The notes under the pieces are model-generated. The model saw only the letters and a list, made by a program, of their open reading frames with translations. It did not search any database and was not told where the DNA came from. The position numbers and the translations under genes are program-made. DNA of 60,732 nucleotides, counting the filler, from Platydemus manokwari (Eukaryota): assembly GCA_037951405.1 (NCBI GenBank). It is 5 parts of 5 records of this genome, joined end to end, with 100 filler letters (N's around TTAATTAATTAA, not from the genome) between each part and the next. Parts side by side here need not be neighbours in the genome. Positions count along the whole stretch, not along the records: positions 1 to 11,025 come from JBBMOY010965528.1; 4 more parts are not named here. One strand, written 5' to 3'. Position 1 is the first letter of the stretch, and every line of letters starts with the position of its first letter. Positions 1 to 11,125 of this stretch are shown one piece after another.

Positions 1-907
1 ATATTTATCATAATATCTTCCTTTTCTAAAGATACGTTGAAAGCACACATGAGCATCTGAAGCATATACAAAAAGGATAATTCTTAAATGGTTTTAAACT
101 ATTATAAACATAATTAATTTTTAATATTATTTCTATTTTTTTATCCCTATATTTTTATTCCTATACGAGTTTTTGTTCATTTTAAATAACTTTTAACTAA
201 AAACTTAAGAAAAGAGGTTAATGTCTAAATTAATTTATGTGTATCGATTATTAAATATATCTTAACTTCATTCGAAGGAATTTCATACATTTTAATAACT
301 TTTAAAATCTATTTTCTATTCATCAAAGATTGCAAACGCATAATCAAAATCGATATCTTCATCCTTTTCGAAAGCTACATATTGTTATATAAGCTGTTTA
401 TAATATAAAGATACAGAGTTAAAACTAAATGAAGCAATAATGTTTACTCGATTAAAATAAATAATTTAAAATACATATTAAATTTTAAAAATGTAGCTCA
501 GTTTGTAAGTACTTTGGCACCCTAAACATGAAAATATAATGTCAAATAAAATATTACCAACATACTATATAGTGACTTTTTAAATTTAAACAATATTTTT
601 TAAATTATTTATACTGGTTGATAATATGCAATTTATATAATAATTATAATCAATTATAATTTTAATTATTTTTTCAAATTAATAGTCAGATTGAGCCACG
701 ATAATCTGTAATTCATTACGAATTGGGTTTTCATGCTATAACGTAATTTATCCTAAAGGCAATACTGCGTTAAAATTTATTGTCTGTTAGCGCTTACAAA
801 TATGATCTGGTTCTGCCACAATATAATAATCATGGGTTTTGGATTACTTGATGAATTAATTTAAAAATTAGTAAATAAACGGATAGCTATTTTCTAGATT
901 TCTTTTA

Positions 908-965
908 GTCGTATCTGTCTCTGACCCGAGGGACTGGTGAGGCCTATAGTAAGGCGAAATATGAC
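908..965 (+). ncRNA. Type III hammerhead ribozyme-like motif with variant core (CUGGUGA)
   Basis: Stem III GTCGTAT(908-914)/ATATGAC(959-965); AUC cleavage triplet (cut after C915); stem I TGTCTC(916-921)/GAGGGA(928-933) with one G.G mismatch and loop TGACCC; core CTGGTGA(934-940); stem II GCCT/AGGC with loop ATAGTA; GAAA(956-959). Order and spacing match the type III hammerhead topology. Confidence 0.75.
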
Positions 966-1054
966 ACAATACGTATCATTAAACCACCATCATTATCATT
1001 GTAGCTATTGTTCTTGAAGGCTCCAAGAGATCGTCATATATATATATATATACA

Positions 1055-1107
1055 TATATATCTGAACCAGGATATTGGTGAGGCTTATGGAGGGCCGAAA
1101 TAGGAGT
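1055..1107 (+). ncRNA. Second, degenerate tandem copy of the type III hammerhead-like motif
   Basis: Stem I TATCT/GGATA around TGAACC; core TTGGTGA(1075-1081); stem II GGCTT/GGGCC with loop ATGGA; GAAA(1097-1100). The 5' strand of stem III is replaced by a (TA)n tract. Clearly homologous to 920-965. Confidence 0.6.
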
Positions 1108-1546
1108 AATTTTTAAACAAAGTTTATTTATTTTTATGTTTTGATCACTTAACAATATTTATATTTCGTATTCCATTGTTTATTTATATAAAAATCAAAA
1201 CTTCTCTTTCTAGAGCATTACTGAACGTTACAGAATATATTGAATCTTATATCCTATCTATTTTATTTTATTTAAACAAAATAATGACGAATATCTGTGC
1301 ACGTTGGGTTTATTATTTACAAAAGACTTTATACATACTACATACTTATCATAGAATTTTCCAACTTCATTATTAAATTTATTAAGTTTTTTAAATTTAT
1401 TTTTTAATTATTTATTTTTTATAAATGAAAAATTATTATATAAAATTAAAATTTAATTTAAGCAGTAACAAGAATCATAAATTATTTGATTTTGATCATT
1501 AATAATAAATATGATTTTCATCATGATTTATTGGAAGTAAATGTCC

Positions 1547-1549
<3 letters not shown>

Positions 1550-1579
<30 letters not shown>
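1550..1579. repeat. (TA)n microsatellite
   Basis: Direct reading. Confidence 0.95.
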
Positions 1580-1582
<3 letters not shown>

Positions 1583-2039
1583 AATAAATAATTGCTAAGA
1601 ACATTTTTTGACAAAAAACTAATGTCGCTAAACTAATGTTGCGTTTGGGGCTTGCTATGTTGTTTTAATTCTATCAGTCTCTTTTTACTATTATTGTTGA
1701 TGATCACTGTTGACTTAATCAGTCTCTCGTGATTCTGATCAAGCCCTAGGTACGAACTATTGAACCTATTTAATATTATTTTCGCCTCGCGTTTAATATT
1801 ATATGAAGATAATATCAAACGGCAACAATGATCAATTATTACTAAAACTATCCCTATGTCTATGTTAACAACTAAACTATCAATCTCTATCAGTCTCAAT
1901 TAAATAATAACTATCAAATCAATAACAAACTCGTGTTTTATAAAAATTTATTGACACAAATATTACGTAACAATTATATAAATTACTACAAACTAATATG
2001 GTTAAATAAAATTTCATACAAAAACTACGAACAACCTTA

Positions 2040-2412
2040 ACAAGCTTCTGGGGAAGATTTACGGTTAAAACCACCTTTCAAGACGTTTAAGATAAAACTC
2101 TATAATAAGACGATATACACGACTGCTATACTACTGATCAGTTGTTTATAGAATTAATCTAACTCACGTATCTTGGGGCATATACTTGAACAAAATGGCT
2201 TATATGTTTCTTCTTGGCGCAAATATAGATCAGTATCCGACAACGAGCAGAATGGATTTGAAAATTTAGCTTCACGTAGCAGACGATTTGAAGATACAAC
2301 TTCACACGATTTGGTTGTAACAGGCGGTAAGTTCGGAAATTATGACGCTTCTCCCCCTATTTATACGATTTGGGAGACGAATTTAATCGTCACGGTTTAT
2401 TGGCGAAAATAA
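2040..2412 (+). mobile_element. Degenerate Ty3/gypsy reverse transcriptase fragment
   Basis: Frameshifted remnants in expected order: GRF..TFQ, DDI (YxDD region), TYLG/HILEQNG (YLGH motif). Heavily decayed. Confidence 0.4.
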
Positions 2413-3039
2413 ATTAATTCCCTAAAGATTTTCCCTATAATTGTTTTAAAATAAAATTTGCTTGTAAAATTATATTGGCGGGATATAAATATTTCGATAT
2501 ATTTCTTTATGTTTAGTCTTGAAAAGGTGTAAAAATATTCTTTAACCGTAATTATTATTTTATGATAACAATAACTATCATTATTATTATCATTATTATT
2601 ACTATTATTATTATTTTTAATTAAAAATTTCTCAGAAGCCTGATAAAAAATATAATATACTGCTTGATTGATCAAGCTTTTCAAAAATTCATTAATATTT
2701 ACAATGCTTGAATGATCAAGCTCTAAAAATTCTAAAAATAACAACTACATTGTCACACTTGAATAAAAATTAATTACAAAATCATTACACCGAAAAACAA
2801 ATGCCATCAGGCATGAACATCAATTGTCAAGATTGTCTCATAGTTATAGATGATGAATTATTGTTATCGAAGAATTTTCCATTTCCCCAACATATGAGTT
2901 AATTAATTCAATATAAAATTGTTAACAATATTTATCAGTAACAAAATATTAATAATGAGAGATTTTATTTGATAGCAATTATAATTGGATGAAATAATTT
3001 ACATTAGGAAAGCGAAATTCAAATTTAGTGATTTTGGTA

Positions 3040-3779
3040 ATGATAGTTTATGTCTTATTGTTTCTTTATTGTGATTATTCGGAAGCAAATAAGTACCCCG
3101 TTGATTATAAACCATGCGGATCAATTTGTTATCATTATGTGGATCAATGGCAACAATTTTGTATGGCTTCTGAAAGATGTTACTCAGTCAATGGAAGATT
3201 GGCAATGGACAAGGAAATACAATTAATCAGGTCATGTTTAAAACTTAAGATAAGATTTTTTACAGGAATAACGGATTTGTTTAACGAACGATATCGAAAT
3301 AAAACTATGTGGATAAATAGCGATGAATCGTTGATTAAAAACAATAACATTTGGATTAGTTCTAAACCAGATAGTTATGATGGAGAAGATTGCACGAGTA
3401 GTGTAAATATAGGTCTTGATGATGTTAAATGTACTATATACACTCATATAATGTGTGTGAGCGTTAATTATACGAGAGTTAATTCAAAAAAATTTAAAAT
3501 CGATATCAAGAACATGTACAATAATGATAATGAAATAGGATGTTATAGAATAATCAAATCGAGAAGTAAATTGGATTGTGGAGCACTGTTAACGATTTAT
3601 TCAATTGTATACTCTTATTGATATTTAATTTTAGATGTCTTCAAGACGATAATTGCAAATCTTTCTACTACAATGATGCTGAAAAACGTTGTGTATTGGT
3701 TAAATATGCTATGAGCACTCTCCCAAAAAGTTGGAATAATGGCAAAGATTTTTGGCTAGGATATCGCATTAAGCATTAA
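3040..3779 (+). CDS. Secreted C-type lectin domain + C-terminal PAN/apple domain protein (exons 3040-3587, 3635-3779)
   Basis: ATG at 3040 begins a hydrophobic signal peptide (MIVYVLLFLYCDYSEA); CTLD motifs CY..C....GRLA, FFTGITD, W...KPD....EDC, LDDVKC......C. A 47-nt GT-AG intron (3588-3634) joins in frame to give CGALCLQDDNCKSFYYNDAEKRCVL, a PAN/apple signature. Confidence 0.85.
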
Positions 3780-4000
3780 TGGCGCTCATCATCTATTTAG
3801 TTAATCAAGCGAATCGATATTTGTTTTGTTGTAGTCATAAAACAAAAACTTTCATCAAATCATGACAATATTTATCCAGTTGTGTCATCATTGATTTTCA
3901 TGTATAACAATAAACAATTCATATTTTTGCAATCAATATTTTTGGATAAATTCCTTTTATTATAAGTGTGAGGATATCAAATTGAATTTGTTTTGAATTT

Positions 4001-4153
4001 AGTTTGATGTTAAATTTTATTTGATGTTAGATTTATTCGATGTTAAATTATTTGATGTTAAATTTATTTGATGTTAAACTTATTTGATGTTAGATTTTAT
4101 TTGATATTAGATTTTATTTGATATTGAATTTTATTCAATATTAAATTTTATTT
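4001..4153. repeat. Minisatellite, ~17-18 bp unit (TTTATTTGATGTTARA), ~8-9 copies
   Basis: Direct reading of imperfect tandem units. Confidence 0.9.
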
Positions 4154-5789
4154 ATTTTGTTTAAATAATTGTATTTGAATAGAATTGAATGTCTAGTCTT
4201 TTCAGTTCGTTTTCGATGCGTATTGTTTTATAAAATAGCAGCGGCTTACAATAAGAATAATTATTAAGTCAAATCAAATTTAAAAATTTAAACTAAGACA
4301 AACAGTGAAGAAAGCAAACAATTTCTAAAGATTTAACCACAATTTTACTCTGTTAACAAAGATTTACTTCTATTTAAACAAATTTAGATAAAAATCACAG
4401 CAATGATAATATTTATATTTACAATAACAATTGTTACTGGTAGCTCTACTGTTTTAAATATTTGAGTAATACTAAGATATTAATCATAATATTTGTCTAA
4501 TCAATATTTAATTTAAACAAAAATTTATAATTATTGAAACACATTTTTATAGGATTTTTGATAATTTCCATTTTGAAAAATTATATATAACTAACAATCA
4601 ATATTTGATTTTTTAAATCAATATTTAGTGTTATGATAGCATTAAGCCTATGATGACATTATTATCAACTTTAATAAATCTGAAATTAATTAATTAAATA
4701 AATAAATAAAATCCGAAACATCGGAAATTTCCTGAAACTAAATCAGTATCAAATGGTCGAACGAAGTTTGAGGGAAAGATGAAAAGAATATCAACAAAAT
4801 AAATAACAAGACACGGTAAATGGGTCTACTATGCCGCAATAAAAGTGAGTAGGTAAATAACGTTAGAAATACTGTATGGAACACGGATGTGTTATCCTCA
4901 ATTATAGAAAAATCAATTCTACACAATTTATGCTGTTATATTTTTTAAAATAAAATAGACAAATTAATTAAATAACTAAAATAATCAATACATGCCAGCA
5001 GATCATTAAATGTAATGCAATATATAGGATACAACCTAATAGAAAGGTATTTGCTGCTGAACTGATAAAATCAATCATAATTATAATATTAAATTTTATT
5101 AATAATAATAAATTTGGCCTGGCTCAAAAGTTTGATATTAAAAATTTGGAATTTTGGACAGATAACATCATTGGTTAATTTTTTGTCATCAAATTATTTT
5201 ATTAGAAATTTAATATTAGAGCCGTGTTGCATGTTTGTCGATCAGCCTATTTGGGCATGAAATAATAAATTAAACAAAAATTTATAATATAATTATATTT
5301 CAACATTATCTTTTTCCATATCTATGGTTTGCTGTGCAGGATAGACAATATATATTCCAGTTGCTATAAACTAACTTTAAAAAATGTGACATTGGTTTAT
5401 TTTACAACCGTGGATTGATTGCAGTAAACTTGGTGTTAAATAGCTCTTACGCCAGATTCGATCTTAAGTAAGACAAATTTTCAAAAATTGCCTAGTTCCA
5501 AGATTTTAATTCTCTACGAGTGTCACTCACATCGGCAAATTAATCCGCTATTAGCACTTGAACATTTTATCATCGCTTAAATTGACATTACTTATTCTTA
5601 ATCGTGTACACTAGTTTTGTTTTTACAACGCTTATTAATTATCAGTTTATAATCAAAGCAATTACATCAAATACAGAGATTAATACACAATCTCAAATAC
5701 AAAGGTTCTTCATGTAAACAGATAAGAGCTTGTAAAATCTTTTAGTTTTTCTAATACATATATTGTTATCTATTCTATTATTTATATTA

Positions 5790-6020
5790 TTATTATTAAA
5801 AGCGAATATCTGCTGCTATAAAAGATCTTTGCCAATCGCCTTTACAATCGCCTTTTGCGTAAAAATGAATCGACAGTGGGACGTATTAGAGACTAGCGTT
5901 TGTGATAATAAGTGCTACGATGTTTAGCAACGAAAATTTGCTTGCCGTGCTTCTCGACAGTATTGCAAAATTTGCATTTGATTTTTGAGTGAAGCCATGA
6001 ACTGCGCTATAAATTTCTTA
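5790..6020 (-). mobile_element. Decayed CGGBP1-like / hAT transposase N-terminal zinc-finger fragment
   Basis: Minus-strand translation KIKCKFCNTVEKHGKQIFVAKHRSTYYHKR followed, after a frameshift, by SFIAADIRF, resembling the CKxC...H..T..H finger and AFxAADIPL motif of CGGBP/hAT-derived proteins. Confidence 0.5.
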
Positions 6021-6066
6021 ATCTTATATACATTAAAATACATTCAGCTACCTATTAACACTGCTA

Positions 6067-6214
6067 TTTCCTTAACTTTTAATAAAATTTTAGACGTCTC
6101 TCATACAACTTATTAATAATATTAAAATAACAGATTTGTTTGTGTTTTTCTGAATTGTATCAAGGTCATAAGTTGCATGAAAGACGTCTAAAATTTTATT
6201 AAAAGATAAGGAAA
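6067..6214. repeat. Inverted repeat / MITE-like foldback (47-bp arms, 54-bp spacer)
   Basis: 6067-6113 is the reverse complement of 6168-6214 with 3 mismatches. Confidence 0.85.
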
Positions 6215-6496
6215 ATTACCTTTTAGTTTATCGAATTTCAATGTCGCTCAAATATTTTAATTCAATAATCAATGCATCTAAGTTTTATAAATGAAGAGGT
6301 TGGCTACAAAGCCGGATAATGTCAATAAATTGTCATTGGATTATTTTCGTTTTTCTTCTTCGTTTCTCTTGGCATTTTCTAGATCGGCATTTTGATAAAT
6401 CTCAAGATGTTGGTTGCCCTTTAGGTTGATGTACAGGATGCCGATGAGTGTGTGAACTGGAAGCTGTAGTGTCTTTTATATTTTATCTCAAACACC

Positions 6497-6592
6497 TAAA
6501 ATTCTTCTTGAGTACTTCAATAAAAAATTCGAAATGTTTTTAAAGAATATAATTAAATAAACTATATATATTTTTGCAATACACTCAACAAA
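6497..6592 (+). repeat. Dispersed repeat, copy 1 (homologous to 13085-13179)
   Basis: Shared core ATAAACTATATA(T/G)ATTTTTGCAATACACTCAACAAA plus ~55 bp of upstream similarity. Confidence 0.85.
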
Positions 6593-7543
6593 AGAATTAT
6601 TAGATTATTTATTAGATTACCATTAGTTAACTTTGACCAGAAAAGATTTATGTGATGATGGAATTAAAGTTTAGAAATCCATTAAATAAAAATATGAAAT
6701 TTTATATTTCATTCTTTCTCGCTTAAACTTAATTAATACTCATCACCAATGTTATTTACTTATTTAAATAACTCAACTTTAATAATAATAATAATTATAA
6801 TAATTATGACTCTACATACAAACACGGTGAGAGTTTAAATTTTCAACATACATACTCAGTATGTCGATAATTTCAAATTTCGTCGATAACAATTTGTGTG
6901 TTTTGTAAATTATTCACATGATTGTGAGTTATGCTATTGTTTAGGTGGGTTTGAATTTGAAACAATTTTAATAAATTATATATCAAATTAAAGGGAATTT
7001 AATAAAGAATTTAAATGAGAACATATAGATATAAATTTTCAAATTTTAGAAAATTCAATTTCCCATTAAGCTTTAGTAAATATTCTAACTTTTGTGGAAA
7101 ATCATTTATAGCATTTAATAACTGGTTTTCGGAAAATTTTTAAATTTTCTATAAAATTTCTTTTGTTTTTGTAATTTTCTTATTTTGTTTTTTTCAAAAA
7201 TGTTTAATAGATTTCTTTCTAATAGTAATAGTTTTATAAATATCTGATATAGAATCTCTACCTTCATTTGCTATAGACGTACATAGTTCCTCTGTATTAT
7301 TAATATTAATATGTCTATTTATTTGGTCAATATGTCGTTTAGATTTCTCATGATTTCTTAAACCTTGAATATTTTAAAAAAACTTTTAAAATTTCACTCT
7401 TTTTCGTTCATTTTTTAAGCATACTGTTTTTATAGTAATTTTCTTTTATTGATTGTTAGCTTAGAAGAGTTAATATTTGATTAATTTTGATTAATTTTGA
7501 TAAATTCTGATGAATTTAGGGTAAATTGTCTTTGTGATTTCGA

Positions 7544-7623
7544 TAGTAGTAGGATAGACCAGTATTTAGAGCCTATTTAGAAGGTTCAAGGTGTGGCTCT
7601 AAATACTTGTCTATCTACTACTA
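7544..7623. repeat. Near-perfect hairpin (30/29-bp arms, 21-nt loop) with AGTAGT...ACTACT ends
   Basis: 7544-7573 pairs with 7595-7623 with one mismatch and one bulge. Confidence 0.85.
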
Positions 7624-7699
7624 GCGTAAGCTTCTGTAGTGATTGCCTTTACTCCTTTTCCACTATTAATAGTACTGTCAAAATAGTGAGAGAAAATTA

Positions 7700-9815
7700 A
7701 TTGTTCGTTAGTCAATATCCAATAGAACTCGACAAGCTATGAAAAGGGCATCGACGCACAACATGGAAGAACCTCAAAATTGACAAACTGTGCACACACA
7801 AGTCGACACCATTTATGATCAAGTAAATCTTATTAGTGTAGATAGCCGACTTGCTGAAATTACTAAAAAAATTGGAAAAGTTTGAACGTGAAGCATGGTT
7901 TACTGATGTGGCATTCATATTGTATCTCGATAGAAACATTGTGAATAAACATTATTTTTTTTTATCAACCATGTCCTCATCAATGCACTAGCTGAAGATA
8001 AGCTTGATATTACTCCCTTTATCCCTATCAATCATTCTAATTTGCTTTCCGAATATTTTAAATAGACATTGGGTTATTTTTGTGTATAATAGAGACACTT
8101 TGGAATCTTTTATTATGGATCCACTTAAAACTGGAAAAATCTTTAAAACTGGCCAAAAATTTGAATATAAAATGAAACTATAACTTTCAGGTTAAATTTC
8201 TATTATTGACAATCTTCATGTCAATGTTTTCAGACAGAAAAATGGTTATGACTTTAGTTCATTTGTATGCGCATAAAGTTTACTTGTAAGTTATATAAGC
8301 CAGCAAATTATCAGAATTAAATGAAAATTCTTTGCCCACATCCGATAGAAAGTCTACCTTTTTCAGTGTGTTAAAGGGAATCACGTAACACAATTAGGTG
8401 GTAGTGGCAACATGAATAATAACGCCAATTATAGTAAACTAAATTTTAAAATTAACGTAAGTAATTTTAATGGATTTTCTAATCATTAGGACGAATAACA
8501 TATTGTTTATAGATAATACCTTAACCACTGCCATCTTCGATGAATGTACTGATTATTTGAAAAAGTTTTTTGATTTAGATAAACTGATTAAATCTTCCAC
8601 GATCTTCGTAATGTTTAGACCTCCAAAAGCTCGTCGACTGCTTTTAGTTCTTGACTTTGCCCGAAGTATTGTCTTTGTGCTAAATCCGATAACATTAATT
8701 TGTAATTATTGATTTATATTTTTTGGTCAAACGATCAATAATATCATCTTAGAACTACAGGGCTTGAACGAATCTTTCGTTGTTGTCCAATATGTCTCAA
8801 ATATTATAATAAAAATTTACGAGTTTTGAATATTTTTTAAACATGATTTTCAATTACTTGAATAATATGGGTGATTTTGATGATCAGTTAAACACCGACA
8901 ATGTTATGGAGAATAATGACAAAAAACAAAAAATATTTTAAAACTAATCAAGGAATAAGTATAATTAATCTAAGTTTAAAAAGTAGAATCGAAAAATTCC
9001 GCAAAAATATTAAAAAGTCAAGCACTCTAATTCAAATAAATTATTGAATAAAATCTTTAACTGCCTTCCTGATAAAACACAAAACCAAAATGATAACAAA
9101 ATAAACCATATTTATGAGTAAGGAAAGGATTCAATAAAAAATAACAGTTGCAACATGAATATGAGCTTTTTAAGCAATATGGGAAAGACTATTAATGATA
9201 TTGTTAACAATCCGAACAAAAAGCTACAAACCGTTTGCCATGATGCATGTCTGAACAAAATTCGATAAAAAAGTAGTATTGTAGTAATTAACCAAACTTG
9301 ATCACTGTCACCAGATTGCAATGATCACATCGATAATAGAGCGTAGAAAGATTTTTCTGGTGGACATGAAATGTCATATTGAAATACTACAAAACTTCTC
9401 GAGGGGTCAAACAAAAATAATATAATTCATTACACAATTTTAGAAATGAGCTAGCAAAATTGAAACCAGATTTCAATATTGAGCATTTCACATGTATTAT
9501 ATGCTCACTTGGCTCATTTCAGGCCTCAACAGAAGCAATTTTGGATAAATTTGGCGTGCTGAAGGATAACATCTGAAACCTGGACAAAGAGTTTTCAAAT
9601 ATTGAAAATTCGGCAAAAATTTGACATTTTCACTCGACCGATGTTTTATCTAATATTAAAAAGCAAAAATTATTCCTACCCATTGAAAAGCCGAGATGAA
9701 TGAAAGAAAAATCAAAATTTTCACAGGCTATGCCGATGACTCCACAAATCAAAACAGTAATCAAGCAGATCAAAATCAATCCAAATAAACAAAGCAAATT
9801 TGTATTTAAAAAAAT
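7700..9815 (+). mobile_element. Degenerate, internally deleted NeSL/R2-group non-LTR retrotransposon (Ulp1-like protease ... restriction-like endonuclease, 3' UTR)
   Basis: Ulp1/C48 motifs EAWFTDVAFILYL (~7890), RHWVIFVYNRDTLESFIMDPL (~8065) and RQKNGYDFSSFVCA (~8232, catalytic Cys lost); CPIC finger (~8785); CHDACLNKI (~9236); IFLVDMKCHIE (~9350); IICSLGSFQASTEAILDKFGV (~9495). The 3' part is homologous to 39727-40055. Confidence 0.7.
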
Positions 9816-11125
9816 CTCGTCATTCACATGAAAATGACAAATATGAGAAATAGCATTAATGACACGATATTGATGATTCCACTGATTATTGATAAAATAT
9901 GGAATGTCTTCAGATGAAATTTATTGATAAATCTCACGGTGAATAGAGAAGCAAAATTCGATAAATGATCACATTTGCAGTAATTATTAGGAGTGCTTGT
10001 TGAAATCTTTCTGCATGCCCATTATCTAATATATTACTAATAATATATTATAATAACATTTTCAGCAAACAATATTATTTATTTTTTCTATTATAAGCAT
10101 TAACAGATATTATCTTTCTGTTATTATAAAAGGAATGAATAGAAACTCAAATAATATCACGAGCACTTGCTCTATTGATGACCGATAAATTCAATGGAAC
10201 AGAATTTTTATTGAATAAATTTTTTTAATAAAAACAAACTAATTCATTTTATTTTCATTGGTTTTCAATTTTTATCAATTCGGCAGCATATTTCACGTTT
10301 ACTCGAATATAGAATTGGAGAACCAGCTCGATATGTTTCATACTGTTTGGTATTTTATTTATTCTTAAGATTGATAAATACTTCAGAGAATAACTGCTAT
10401 ATGAATGTTACTTTAACTTTTCTTATCCGCAAATAGAAATAATAAAGGGAGAGATTGTTCATGAAATTTGATAACGATGTTATCTTGCAGACAGTCTATT
10501 AAATGATTAAAAAGAACTGAATATTGTTACAATACCATTTAGATGTTTTATCGATTTACAATTAGAGGCGAGCAAAGTTTGAAAAATCACAGCCCATAAA
10601 CTGAATGAATGCTCATTGAACTCGCCAATTATAGTCCGATAAAAATAGCATTTATCCGATTACGTTTAAACAGTGATGACACACAACTAATATTCAAAAG
10701 CGCTTACTACAATAAAACAATATAATGATTTAAACGAAGTTAATGAGCTGATTGGTTTTTCACTTTCGTGACTTGTATCAGGTTGAGTTGATCGAATATT
10801 AAAAAAGTTTACCAAGTAACTGCTCATTATAATTGAAAATGATTATTAAAAAAATTTAATGATATATTGTAATGTTGTCGATCAATCAAGAACGCTATTA
10901 TTACATATCTATTAATCGCTGGAAGAGAATTTCAAATTTGCTTTCTCCAATTATACCAGGTTGAGTCAAAAGTTATTCATGTTTTTATGCAGGTATTTTA
11001 TTAACACAAATTGTTATAACGCTGANNNNNNNNNNNNNNNNNNNNNNNNNNNNNNNNNNNNNNNNNNNNTTAATTAATTAANNNNNNNNNNNNNNNNNNN
11101 NNNNNNNNNNNNNNNNNNNNNNNNN

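What the first reader, a model, noticed from the sequence alone, without database searches (positions are those of the whole stretch)
908..965. Intact-looking type III hammerhead ribozyme fold with a non-canonical A6G core
Seen: all three helices, an AUC cleavage triplet and GAAA are correctly placed; loop I starts with UG and loop II ends in A, as expected for the loop I-II tertiary contact. The core reads CUGGUGA rather than CUGANGA, and stem II has an extra G. Known: standard hammerhead descriptors require CUGANGA, so this copy would be missed, and most reported animal hammerheads are type I. Inference: an overlooked self-cleaving RNA family in this genome.
Basis: partly seen in the sequence, partly recalled or inferred. 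Interest (0 to 1): 0.8.

Follow-up and report, generated by a model that had tools for sequence, protein, structure and literature searches.

The report
Decayed hammerhead ribozyme copy in repeat
The hammerhead-like fold at 908-965 is real, but it is a mutated, probably dead copy of an ordinary (canonical-core) type III hammerhead ribozyme carried by a short repeat that occurs many times in this probably animal genome; it is not a new ribozyme variant.

Summary
The motif is at 908-965 (+) as described. A relaxed hammerhead descriptor finds only this site in the window, and 2 of 300 shuffled windows give any hit.

It is not intact. It has G at core position 6, one mispair in stem I and two in stem II. 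Its lowest-energy fold is not the hammerhead, and Rfam gives no hammerhead match even at E<=10.

Laying one public run's contigs on 600-1400 placed 724 contigs there; pieces at 80-90% identity cover about 815-1024, so that stretch is a repeat. The other copies mostly read:
- A at 937, giving the core CUGAUGA;
- C at 932, which repairs stem I;
- G at 952 and C at 954, which give stem II GGCC/GGCC;
- C911 with G962, where this copy has G-U.

With these ten letters the 58-mer's lowest-energy fold is exactly a canonical type III hammerhead, 17 of 17 pairs. A second, truncated copy at 1057-1106 agrees with the majority at five of the nine comparable sites (920-965) where the first copy deviates.

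The "A6G core" and the "extra G" are therefore private mutations. The family is real but canonical. Type III in an apparently animal repeat is moderately unusual. No RNA data were available.

The parts
908..965 (+). Decayed type III hammerhead ribozyme copy ('copy A'). Layout: stem III 908-914/959-965; C915 = position 17 (the would-be cleavage site lies 3' of it); stem I 916-921/928-933 with loop 922-927; core 934-940 CUGGUGA (G937 = position 6); stem II hairpin 941-955; GAAA 956-959.
   Evidence: Sequence. It is the only hit of the relaxed descriptor, and 2 of 300 shuffles give any hit. It has three non-pairs plus G6, and the hammerhead fold scores -5.1 against an MFE of -17.1 kcal/mol. No Rfam hammerhead hit.
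815..1024 (+). Copy of a dispersed repeat that carries the hammerhead in its middle. It probably continues upstream of 815 with a 13-nt deletion relative to the other copies (inference).
   Evidence: laid 724 contigs of run X1 on 600-1400 at 80% likeness or more. Contig pieces cover 815-960, 818-1008, 864-1008, 865-1024, 866-1018 and 882-1024, with 24-32 differing letters each. 34 contigs share a common loose-end consensus just before 815; its GGGTTCTGC matches window 808-815, after which 13 letters are missing here.
1057..1106 (+). Second, 5'-truncated and decayed copy of the same hammerhead ('copy B'). Stem I remnant 1057-1074; core UUGGUGA 1075-1081; intact stem II hairpin GGCUU/GGGCC 1082-1096; GAAA 1097-1100. 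Only 2 bp of stem III remain.
   Evidence: Local alignment to copy A scores 48 against 28.9 +/- 4.5 for shuffles. TGGTGAGGC occurs exactly twice, at 935 and 1076, where 0.28 matches at <=1 mismatch are expected by chance. Over 46 ungapped positions, 35 are identical to the family majority and 32 to copy A. B agrees with the majority at 948, 950, 952, 954 and 962, where A deviates.
1036..1061 (.). (AT)13 microsatellite between the two copies. It abuts and overlaps the 5' edge of copy B, a few nucleotides from the position equivalent to the cleavage site.

Best explanation
Window 908-965 is a mutated relic of a canonical type III hammerhead ribozyme. The ribozyme sits inside a short, AT-rich repeat that has many copies in this genome.

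In the family's better-preserved copies, the transcript is expected to fold into three helices around the CUGAUGA / GAAA core and to cut itself 3' of the C that corresponds to C915. This is how repeat-borne hammerheads process their RNA in retrozymes, SINE-like elements and satellite transcripts. That step is inferred from the sequence, not shown.

This particular copy has drifted from the family majority at 10 of 58 positions. Three kinds of change are damaging:
- A6 to G in the catalytic core (937);
- C to G at 932, which breaks the second pair of stem I;
- G to A at 952 and C to G at 954, which break two of the four stem II pairs.

It now prefers a competing fold and is most likely inactive or nearly so. 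The neighbouring fragment at 1057-1106 is another dead copy. The 'non-canonical core' is decay, not design.
For: One search gives the letters of the other copies at the sites where this copy is odd:
- 937 G>A: 37 contigs, 626 of 713 depth units.
- 932 G>C: 39 contigs, 674 of 820.
- 954 G>C: 208 of 282, plus G>T 54, which would still pair as G-U.
- 952 A>G: 187 of 294.
- 911 G>C: 88 contigs, 5846 of 6435.
- 962 T>G: 290 of 365.
No variant is listed at core positions 934-936, 938-940 or 957-959.

putting the 10 majority letters into 908-965 gives an MFE structure (-19.2 kcal/mol) identical to the canonical type III hammerhead. All 17 pairs are standard, the core is CUGAUGA, GAAA is present and C is at position 17. 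The window copy has 3 non-pairs and misfolds.

The pair 911-962 is C-G in the family and G-U here. Both sides changed and pairing was kept.

Copy B inside the window independently shows the majority letters at 5 of the 9 sites in the block compared (920-965) where A deviates, and it keeps a perfect stem II with one-sided changes.

the motif is not a chance hit; this copy fails Rfam.

Against: - I never saw a whole sequence of another copy, only per-site letter counts from contigs. Whether any single copy combines all the canonical letters is therefore inferred, not shown.
- The contigs come from one run that is probably the source sample.
- Depths of contigs are not copy numbers.
- No RNA run holds the region, so transcription and cleavage are untested.
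- Both window copies carry G at position 6, so a small G6 subfamily cannot be excluded.
Confidence: 0.85

Rival explanations
1. One reading: an active, overlooked hammerhead variant whose core tolerates or prefers G at position 6, defining a new family.
For: All three helices can be drawn and the other core letters are right. Both window copies carry G at that position. Rare natural core variants that keep some activity are known (PMC3088659).
Against: About 88% of the depth at 937 reads A. This copy also carries stem I and stem II defects and misfolds. Copy B additionally has U at position 3 and no stem III. A and B share only 2 of A's 9 deviations in the compared block, which is about what chance gives. 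A6 changes give low activity (PMC3088659).
Confidence: 0.05
2. Chance resemblance: an AT-rich genome produces a relaxed hammerhead-like pattern with no ribozyme ancestry.
For: The descriptor needed three relaxations. Across a scan of many windows, a rate of 0.007 per 11 kb would still yield false hits.
Against: Every deviation from the hammerhead consensus is 'corrected' in the majority of paralogous copies. A second copy lies 140 nt away.
Confidence: 0.01
3. The repeat family carries a hammerhead-shaped sequence that is never used as a ribozyme, for example because it is not transcribed on this strand. The motif would then be an inherited fossil in all copies.
For: No RNA evidence. Many copies vary at stem and core sites: 956 G>A in about 20% of depth, 952 A in about 36%, 928 G>A in about 14%.
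Against: Within the family, variation is concentrated in the loops (924, 945, 948, 950). Several stem variants keep pairing: 943 C>T, 954 T, and 911/962 in this copy. The majority sequence is a flawless hammerhead, which would not be expected to persist without a functioning source copy.
Confidence: 0.09

Closest known systems
Type III hammerhead ribozyme (Rfam Hammerhead_3, RF00008), as in sTRSV, viroid-like RNAs and plant genomes
   Same: Open stem III, with hairpins on stems I and II. The family-majority sequence has the full consensus: C3 U4 G5 A6 U7 G8 A9, G12 A13 A14, A15.1-U16.1 and C17. It has 6-nt and 7-nt loops that could make the loop-loop contact. A stable 7-bp stem III fits monomeric cleavage.
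   Different: The window copy has G6 and broken stems I and II, and gets no Rfam hit. The host looks like an animal and the context is AT-rich. Plants and their circular RNA pathogens are the usual home of type III (PMC7761336).
Plant LTR retrozymes (type III hammerheads in long terminal repeats)
   Same: A type III hammerhead embedded in a multi-copy non-coding repeat. Two hammerhead copies lie in direct orientation nearby.
   Different: No tRNA-Met primer binding site in the window. The two copies are only about 140 nt apart, not 600-1000. The sequence is AT-rich rather than >55% GC. No LTR structure was seen.
Metazoan non-LTR retrozymes, Schistosoma SM-alpha, and the interspersed hammerhead repeats of Aedes, Nematostella and Xenopus
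   Same: A short, AT-rich, multi-copy animal repeat with an internal hammerhead. [quoted passage not shown]
   Different: Those carry type I hammerheads, often with a weak stem III that needs dimers (PMC7229834, PMC7761336). Here the topology is type III with a strong stem III. No regular tandem array was seen in the window.

Membership tests
Hammerhead ribozyme (this copy, 908-965) | Core C3 U4 G5 A6 N7 G8 A9 | tested here: not met
   934-940 reads CUGGUGA, with G at position 6. The strict descriptor gives 0 hits.
Hammerhead ribozyme (this copy, 908-965) | G12 A13 A14, A15.1-U16.1 pair, H at position 17 | tested here: met
   GAAA at 956-959, U914-A959, C915.
Hammerhead ribozyme (this copy, 908-965) | Three helices without multiple mispairs; pairs next to the core intact | tested here: not met
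   The core-adjacent pairs are present (U916-A933, G941-C955). However G917/G932, G942/G954 and C944/A952 do not pair, and the hammerhead fold scores -5.1 against an MFE of -17.1 kcal/mol.
Hammerhead ribozyme (this copy, 908-965) | Match to Rfam Hammerhead_3 covariance model | tested here: not met
   No hammerhead hit at E<=10 on 1-11025 or on 880-1130.
Hammerhead ribozyme (this copy, 908-965) | Site-specific self-cleavage | not testable with these tools
   No RNA run holds the region. Raw reads were not available.
Hammerhead ribozyme type III (the repeat family, majority letters) | Full consensus core, three uninterrupted helices, open stem III | tested here: met
   The majority letters, placed in 908-965, give CUGAUGA...GAAA, 17 of 17 standard pairs, and an MFE equal to the hammerhead structure. 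Caveat: these are per-site majorities, not a sequence seen in one copy.
Hammerhead ribozyme type III (the repeat family, majority letters) | Covariation supporting the helices | tested here: inconclusive
   One double change keeps the 911-962 pair (C-G in the family, G-U here). Copy B has A-U where the family has G917-C932, but that A lies in the (AT)n run. Wobble-compatible minor variants occur at 943 and 954. No full alignment of copies was obtainable.
LTR retrozyme | Hammerheads in long terminal repeats, tRNA-Met PBS, polypurine tract, 600-1000 nt between ribozymes | tested here: not met
   No PBS match at up to 2 mismatches. The copies are about 140 nt apart.
Non-LTR (metazoan) retrozyme | Tandem repeats of about 150-450 bp, each with a type I hammerhead; circular RNA products | tested here: inconclusive
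   The topology is type III, not type I. Two copies lie in direct orientation, but the second is truncated and no tandem period was detected. Circular RNA is not testable here.

The most novel reading that the evidence does not exclude
The repeat family itself may be an undescribed kind of animal hammerhead element. It would be a short, AT-rich, non-LTR repeat that carries a canonical, monomer-competent type III hammerhead. That would be a third combination, beside plant LTR retrozymes (type III) and animal non-LTR retrozymes (type I). The similarity of copy B starts within a few nucleotides of the cleavage site, which hints at re-insertion of self-cleaved RNA.
Probability: 0.3. Interest if true: 0.55.

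Novelty: new member of a known kind. Interest (0 to 1): 0.3.

Why it matters
For this locus it matters little. It is a dead copy, of the kind genome-wide hammerhead screens routinely discard.

At family level there is modest interest. The literature I read places type I hammerheads in animal repeats and type III in plants and viroid-like RNAs, with only a passing mention of type III elements in insects (PMC7761336). A multi-copy type III element in an apparently animal genome would add a data point on how hammerhead-bearing mobile elements are distributed, and possibly on how they move between kingdoms.

There is also a practical lesson for this scan. An 'odd core' in a single copy should be checked against its paralogues before it is called a variant.

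Tried and rejected
- An alternative register, with CUGA at 921-924 and GA at 939-940 and a hairpin inserted at position 7. It was suggested by the UCUGA shared between copies A and B. Rejected because it leaves no room for stem I in copy A, and because the family majority restores the ordinary register.
- A type I reading using the downstream ACGUAUC at 970-977 as the stem III partner. Stem I then cannot form.
- The minus strand. It shows no fold signal (z = -0.06).
- Fetching real copies from public collections. Two metagenome scans and one viral scan found nothing. The single genome-contig hit (L001, a betaproteobacterial MAG) is a chance match with no hammerhead by Rfam.
- Fetching copies through spurious ORFs. 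The ORFs over the element are under the 40-aa minimum.
- Identifying the organism:
  - The word search with the lectin-like ORF found nothing.
  - Exact look-ups found no record.
  - Only an atlas feature match (C-type lectin clusters whose commonest phylum is Arthropoda; mixed PAN/lectin clusters listed under Mollusca and Platyhelminthes) and a PAN_1 Pfam hit point to an animal.
- A literature string search for the ribozyme sequence found only unrelated PCR primers.
- Three key papers were not held: RNA 2010 16:1943, RNA 2011 17:21 and RNA 2012 18:871.

Full report
**What is there.** The stretch 908-965 (+) reads GUCGUAUC UGUCUCUGACCCGAGGGA CUGGUGA GGCCUAUAGUAAGGC GAAA UAUGAC. In hammerhead numbering:
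- 908-914 pairs with 959-965 (stem III, 7 bp, including U16.1-A15.1 and a G911-U962 wobble).
- C915 is position 17.
- 916-921 pairs with 928-933 (stem I), with G917/G932 unpaired. Loop 1 is UGACCC.
- 934-940 is the core, with G instead of A at position 6.
- 941-955 is the stem II hairpin.
- 956-959 is GAAA.

It finds this site and no other on either strand of the 11,025-base piece. Only 2 of 300 dinucleotide-preserving shuffles gave any hit, and a strict descriptor gives none. The motif is not a chance pattern at the scale of this window.

**It is not intact.**
- In the normal register stem II has two non-pairs (G942/G954 and C944/A952). The 'extra G' is what remains when the helix slips by one base to avoid them.
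- ViennaRNA gives the hammerhead structure only -5.1 kcal/mol. The minimum-free-energy fold is -17.1, and in it the 5' strand of stem III pairs with the mutated core.
- Rfam release 15 gives no hammerhead match at E<=10, either on the whole piece or on 880-1130 alone, where the filters are laxest.

**The decisive evidence: it is one copy of a repeat.** One public run (X1, contigs; it holds 64% of the sampled words of 1-6000) was laid on 600-1400 at 80% likeness or more. 724 contigs were laid. Pieces at roughly 80-90% identity cover 815-960, 818-1008, 864-1008, 865-1024, 866-1018 and 882-1024. So about 815-1024 is a multi-copy element.

The table of 'other letters' shows what the paralogues carry at exactly the positions that make this copy odd:
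- 937 G>A: 37 contigs, 626 of 713 depth units.
- 932 G>C: 39 contigs.
- 954 G>C, plus a G>T minority that would still pair.
- 952 A>G.
- 911 G>C: 88 contigs.
- 962 T>G.
- Loop changes at 925, 945, 948 and 950.

No variant is listed at the other core positions apart from a minority G>A at 956 (G12).

I put those ten majority letters into 908-965. The result is a 58-mer whose minimum-free-energy structure (-19.2 kcal/mol) is exactly the canonical type III hammerhead. Its features are:
- stem III GUCCUAU/AUAGGAC;
- C17;
- stem I UGUCUC/GAGGCA;
- core CUGAUGA;
- stem II GGCC/GGCC with loop CAUGGAA;
- GAAA;
- 17 of 17 standard pairs.

The pair 911-962 is C-G in the family and G-U here: both sides changed and the pair was kept.

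**A second copy in the window.** TGGTGAGGC occurs exactly twice, at 935 and 1076, where 0.28 matches at <=1 mismatch are expected by chance. The region 1054-1146 aligns to 913-1013 with a score of 48, against 28.9 +/- 4.5 for shuffles.

Over 46 ungapped positions, copy B (1061-1106) matches the family majority at 35 and copy A at 32. It carries the majority letter at 948, 950, 952, 954 and 962, which is five of the nine sites in that block where A deviates. This is an in-window check on the contig-derived letters.

Copy B keeps a perfect stem II (GGCUU/GGGCC). However, it has U at position 3, G at position 6 and only 2 bp of stem III, so it is dead too. Its 5' edge abuts an (AT)13 run.

A and B share two minority letters (G at 937, T at 945). 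With nine deviations in A and eleven in B over 46 sites, that is about what chance gives. I do not read it as a G6 subfamily, but I cannot exclude one.

**How it most likely works.**
- Shown: the sequence family and its canonical consensus features.
- Inferred: better-preserved copies, when transcribed on the + strand, fold and cleave 3' of the C equivalent to C915. This would leave a 2',3'-cyclic phosphate and a 5'-OH, and would process the repeat's RNA. Plant LTR retrozymes, animal non-LTR retrozymes and SINE-like or interspersed hammerhead repeats work this way (PMC4918200 abstract; PMC7229834; PMC7761336; PMC3088659).
- For this copy: it differs from the majority at 10 of 58 positions, with damaging changes in the core and two stems, and it misfolds, so it is most likely inactive. 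Perreault et al. report low activity for a natural A6C variant and cite the classical mutational analysis for this position. [quoted passage not shown] That describes this locus.

**What kind of element.** There is no tRNA-Met primer-binding site and no tandem period around the ribozyme. The spacing between the two copies is about 140 nt, and the sequence is AT-rich (21-33% GC across the piece). It is therefore not a plant-type LTR retrozyme.

It resembles animal hammerhead repeats in size, base composition and copy number, but its topology is type III with a strong stem III. The animal elements described in the papers I could read carry type I.

The host is probably an animal:
- ORF 3570-3776 has a PAN_1 domain.
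- ORF 2998-3618 looks like a C-type lectin by atlas features; those clusters list Arthropoda as commonest phylum, and mixed PAN/lectin clusters list Mollusca and Platyhelminthes (a lead only).

PMC7761336 mentions type III-bearing elements in 'bacteria or insects' without detail. I could not establish whether this family has been described, because the organism is coded and three key papers were not held.

**Limits.**
- I saw per-site letter counts, not whole paralogous sequences. Whether intact copies exist is inferred.
- The contig depths fall about six-fold between 911 and 924. This may only reflect the 80% likeness threshold acting on this badly diverged copy. It could also mean that many copies diverge near the cleavage site. 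The tool warns that depth is not copy number, so I draw no conclusion.
- No RNA run was available.
- No copies were found in the metagenome or viral collections. The one genome-contig hit is a chance match.

**Verdict.** This is a decayed member of a canonical type III hammerhead repeat family: a new member of a known kind. Interest is low for the locus and moderate for the family if the host is indeed an animal.

Noticed in passing
window 6067-6214: A 47-nt inverted repeat, 94% complementary, with a 54-nt spacer. It forms a long hairpin. Rfam gives only sub-threshold miRNA-precursor matches (MIR6224 at 30 bits against a gathering score of 171). It looks like a MITE or foldback element rather than a known miRNA.
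   Followed up: no
window 3998-4153: A 17-nt tandem array (TTTATTTGATGTTAAAT, 9.4 copies, 86% matches), just downstream of the lectin/PAN ORFs.
   Followed up: no
window 2998-3776 (+): Two adjacent open frames. One is C-type-lectin-like by atlas features but has no Pfam hit and no word-search relatives. The other has a PAN_1 domain (E = 3.5e-05). They are probably exons of one fast-evolving secreted lectin/PAN gene of an animal.
   Followed up: partly
window 911-924 (depths): Summed contig depth drops from about 6400 at 911 to about 990 at 924, close to the predicted cleavage site at 915/916. Separately, the similarity of copy B begins within a few nucleotides of the equivalent position. This could be an alignment-threshold artefact, or a sign that many copies start or end at the ribozyme cut.
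   Followed up: partly
window 795-815: The consensus that 34 other contigs share before 815 (ending GGGTTCTGCGTGGATTTTTA) matches window 808-815, then has 13 letters that are absent here. This copy of the repeat therefore seems to carry a 13-nt deletion, and the element extends further upstream than 815.
   Followed up: no
window 1036-1061 and 1550-1579: Two (AT)n microsatellites about 500 nt apart, (AT)13 and (AT)15. The first separates the two hammerhead copies.
   Followed up: no
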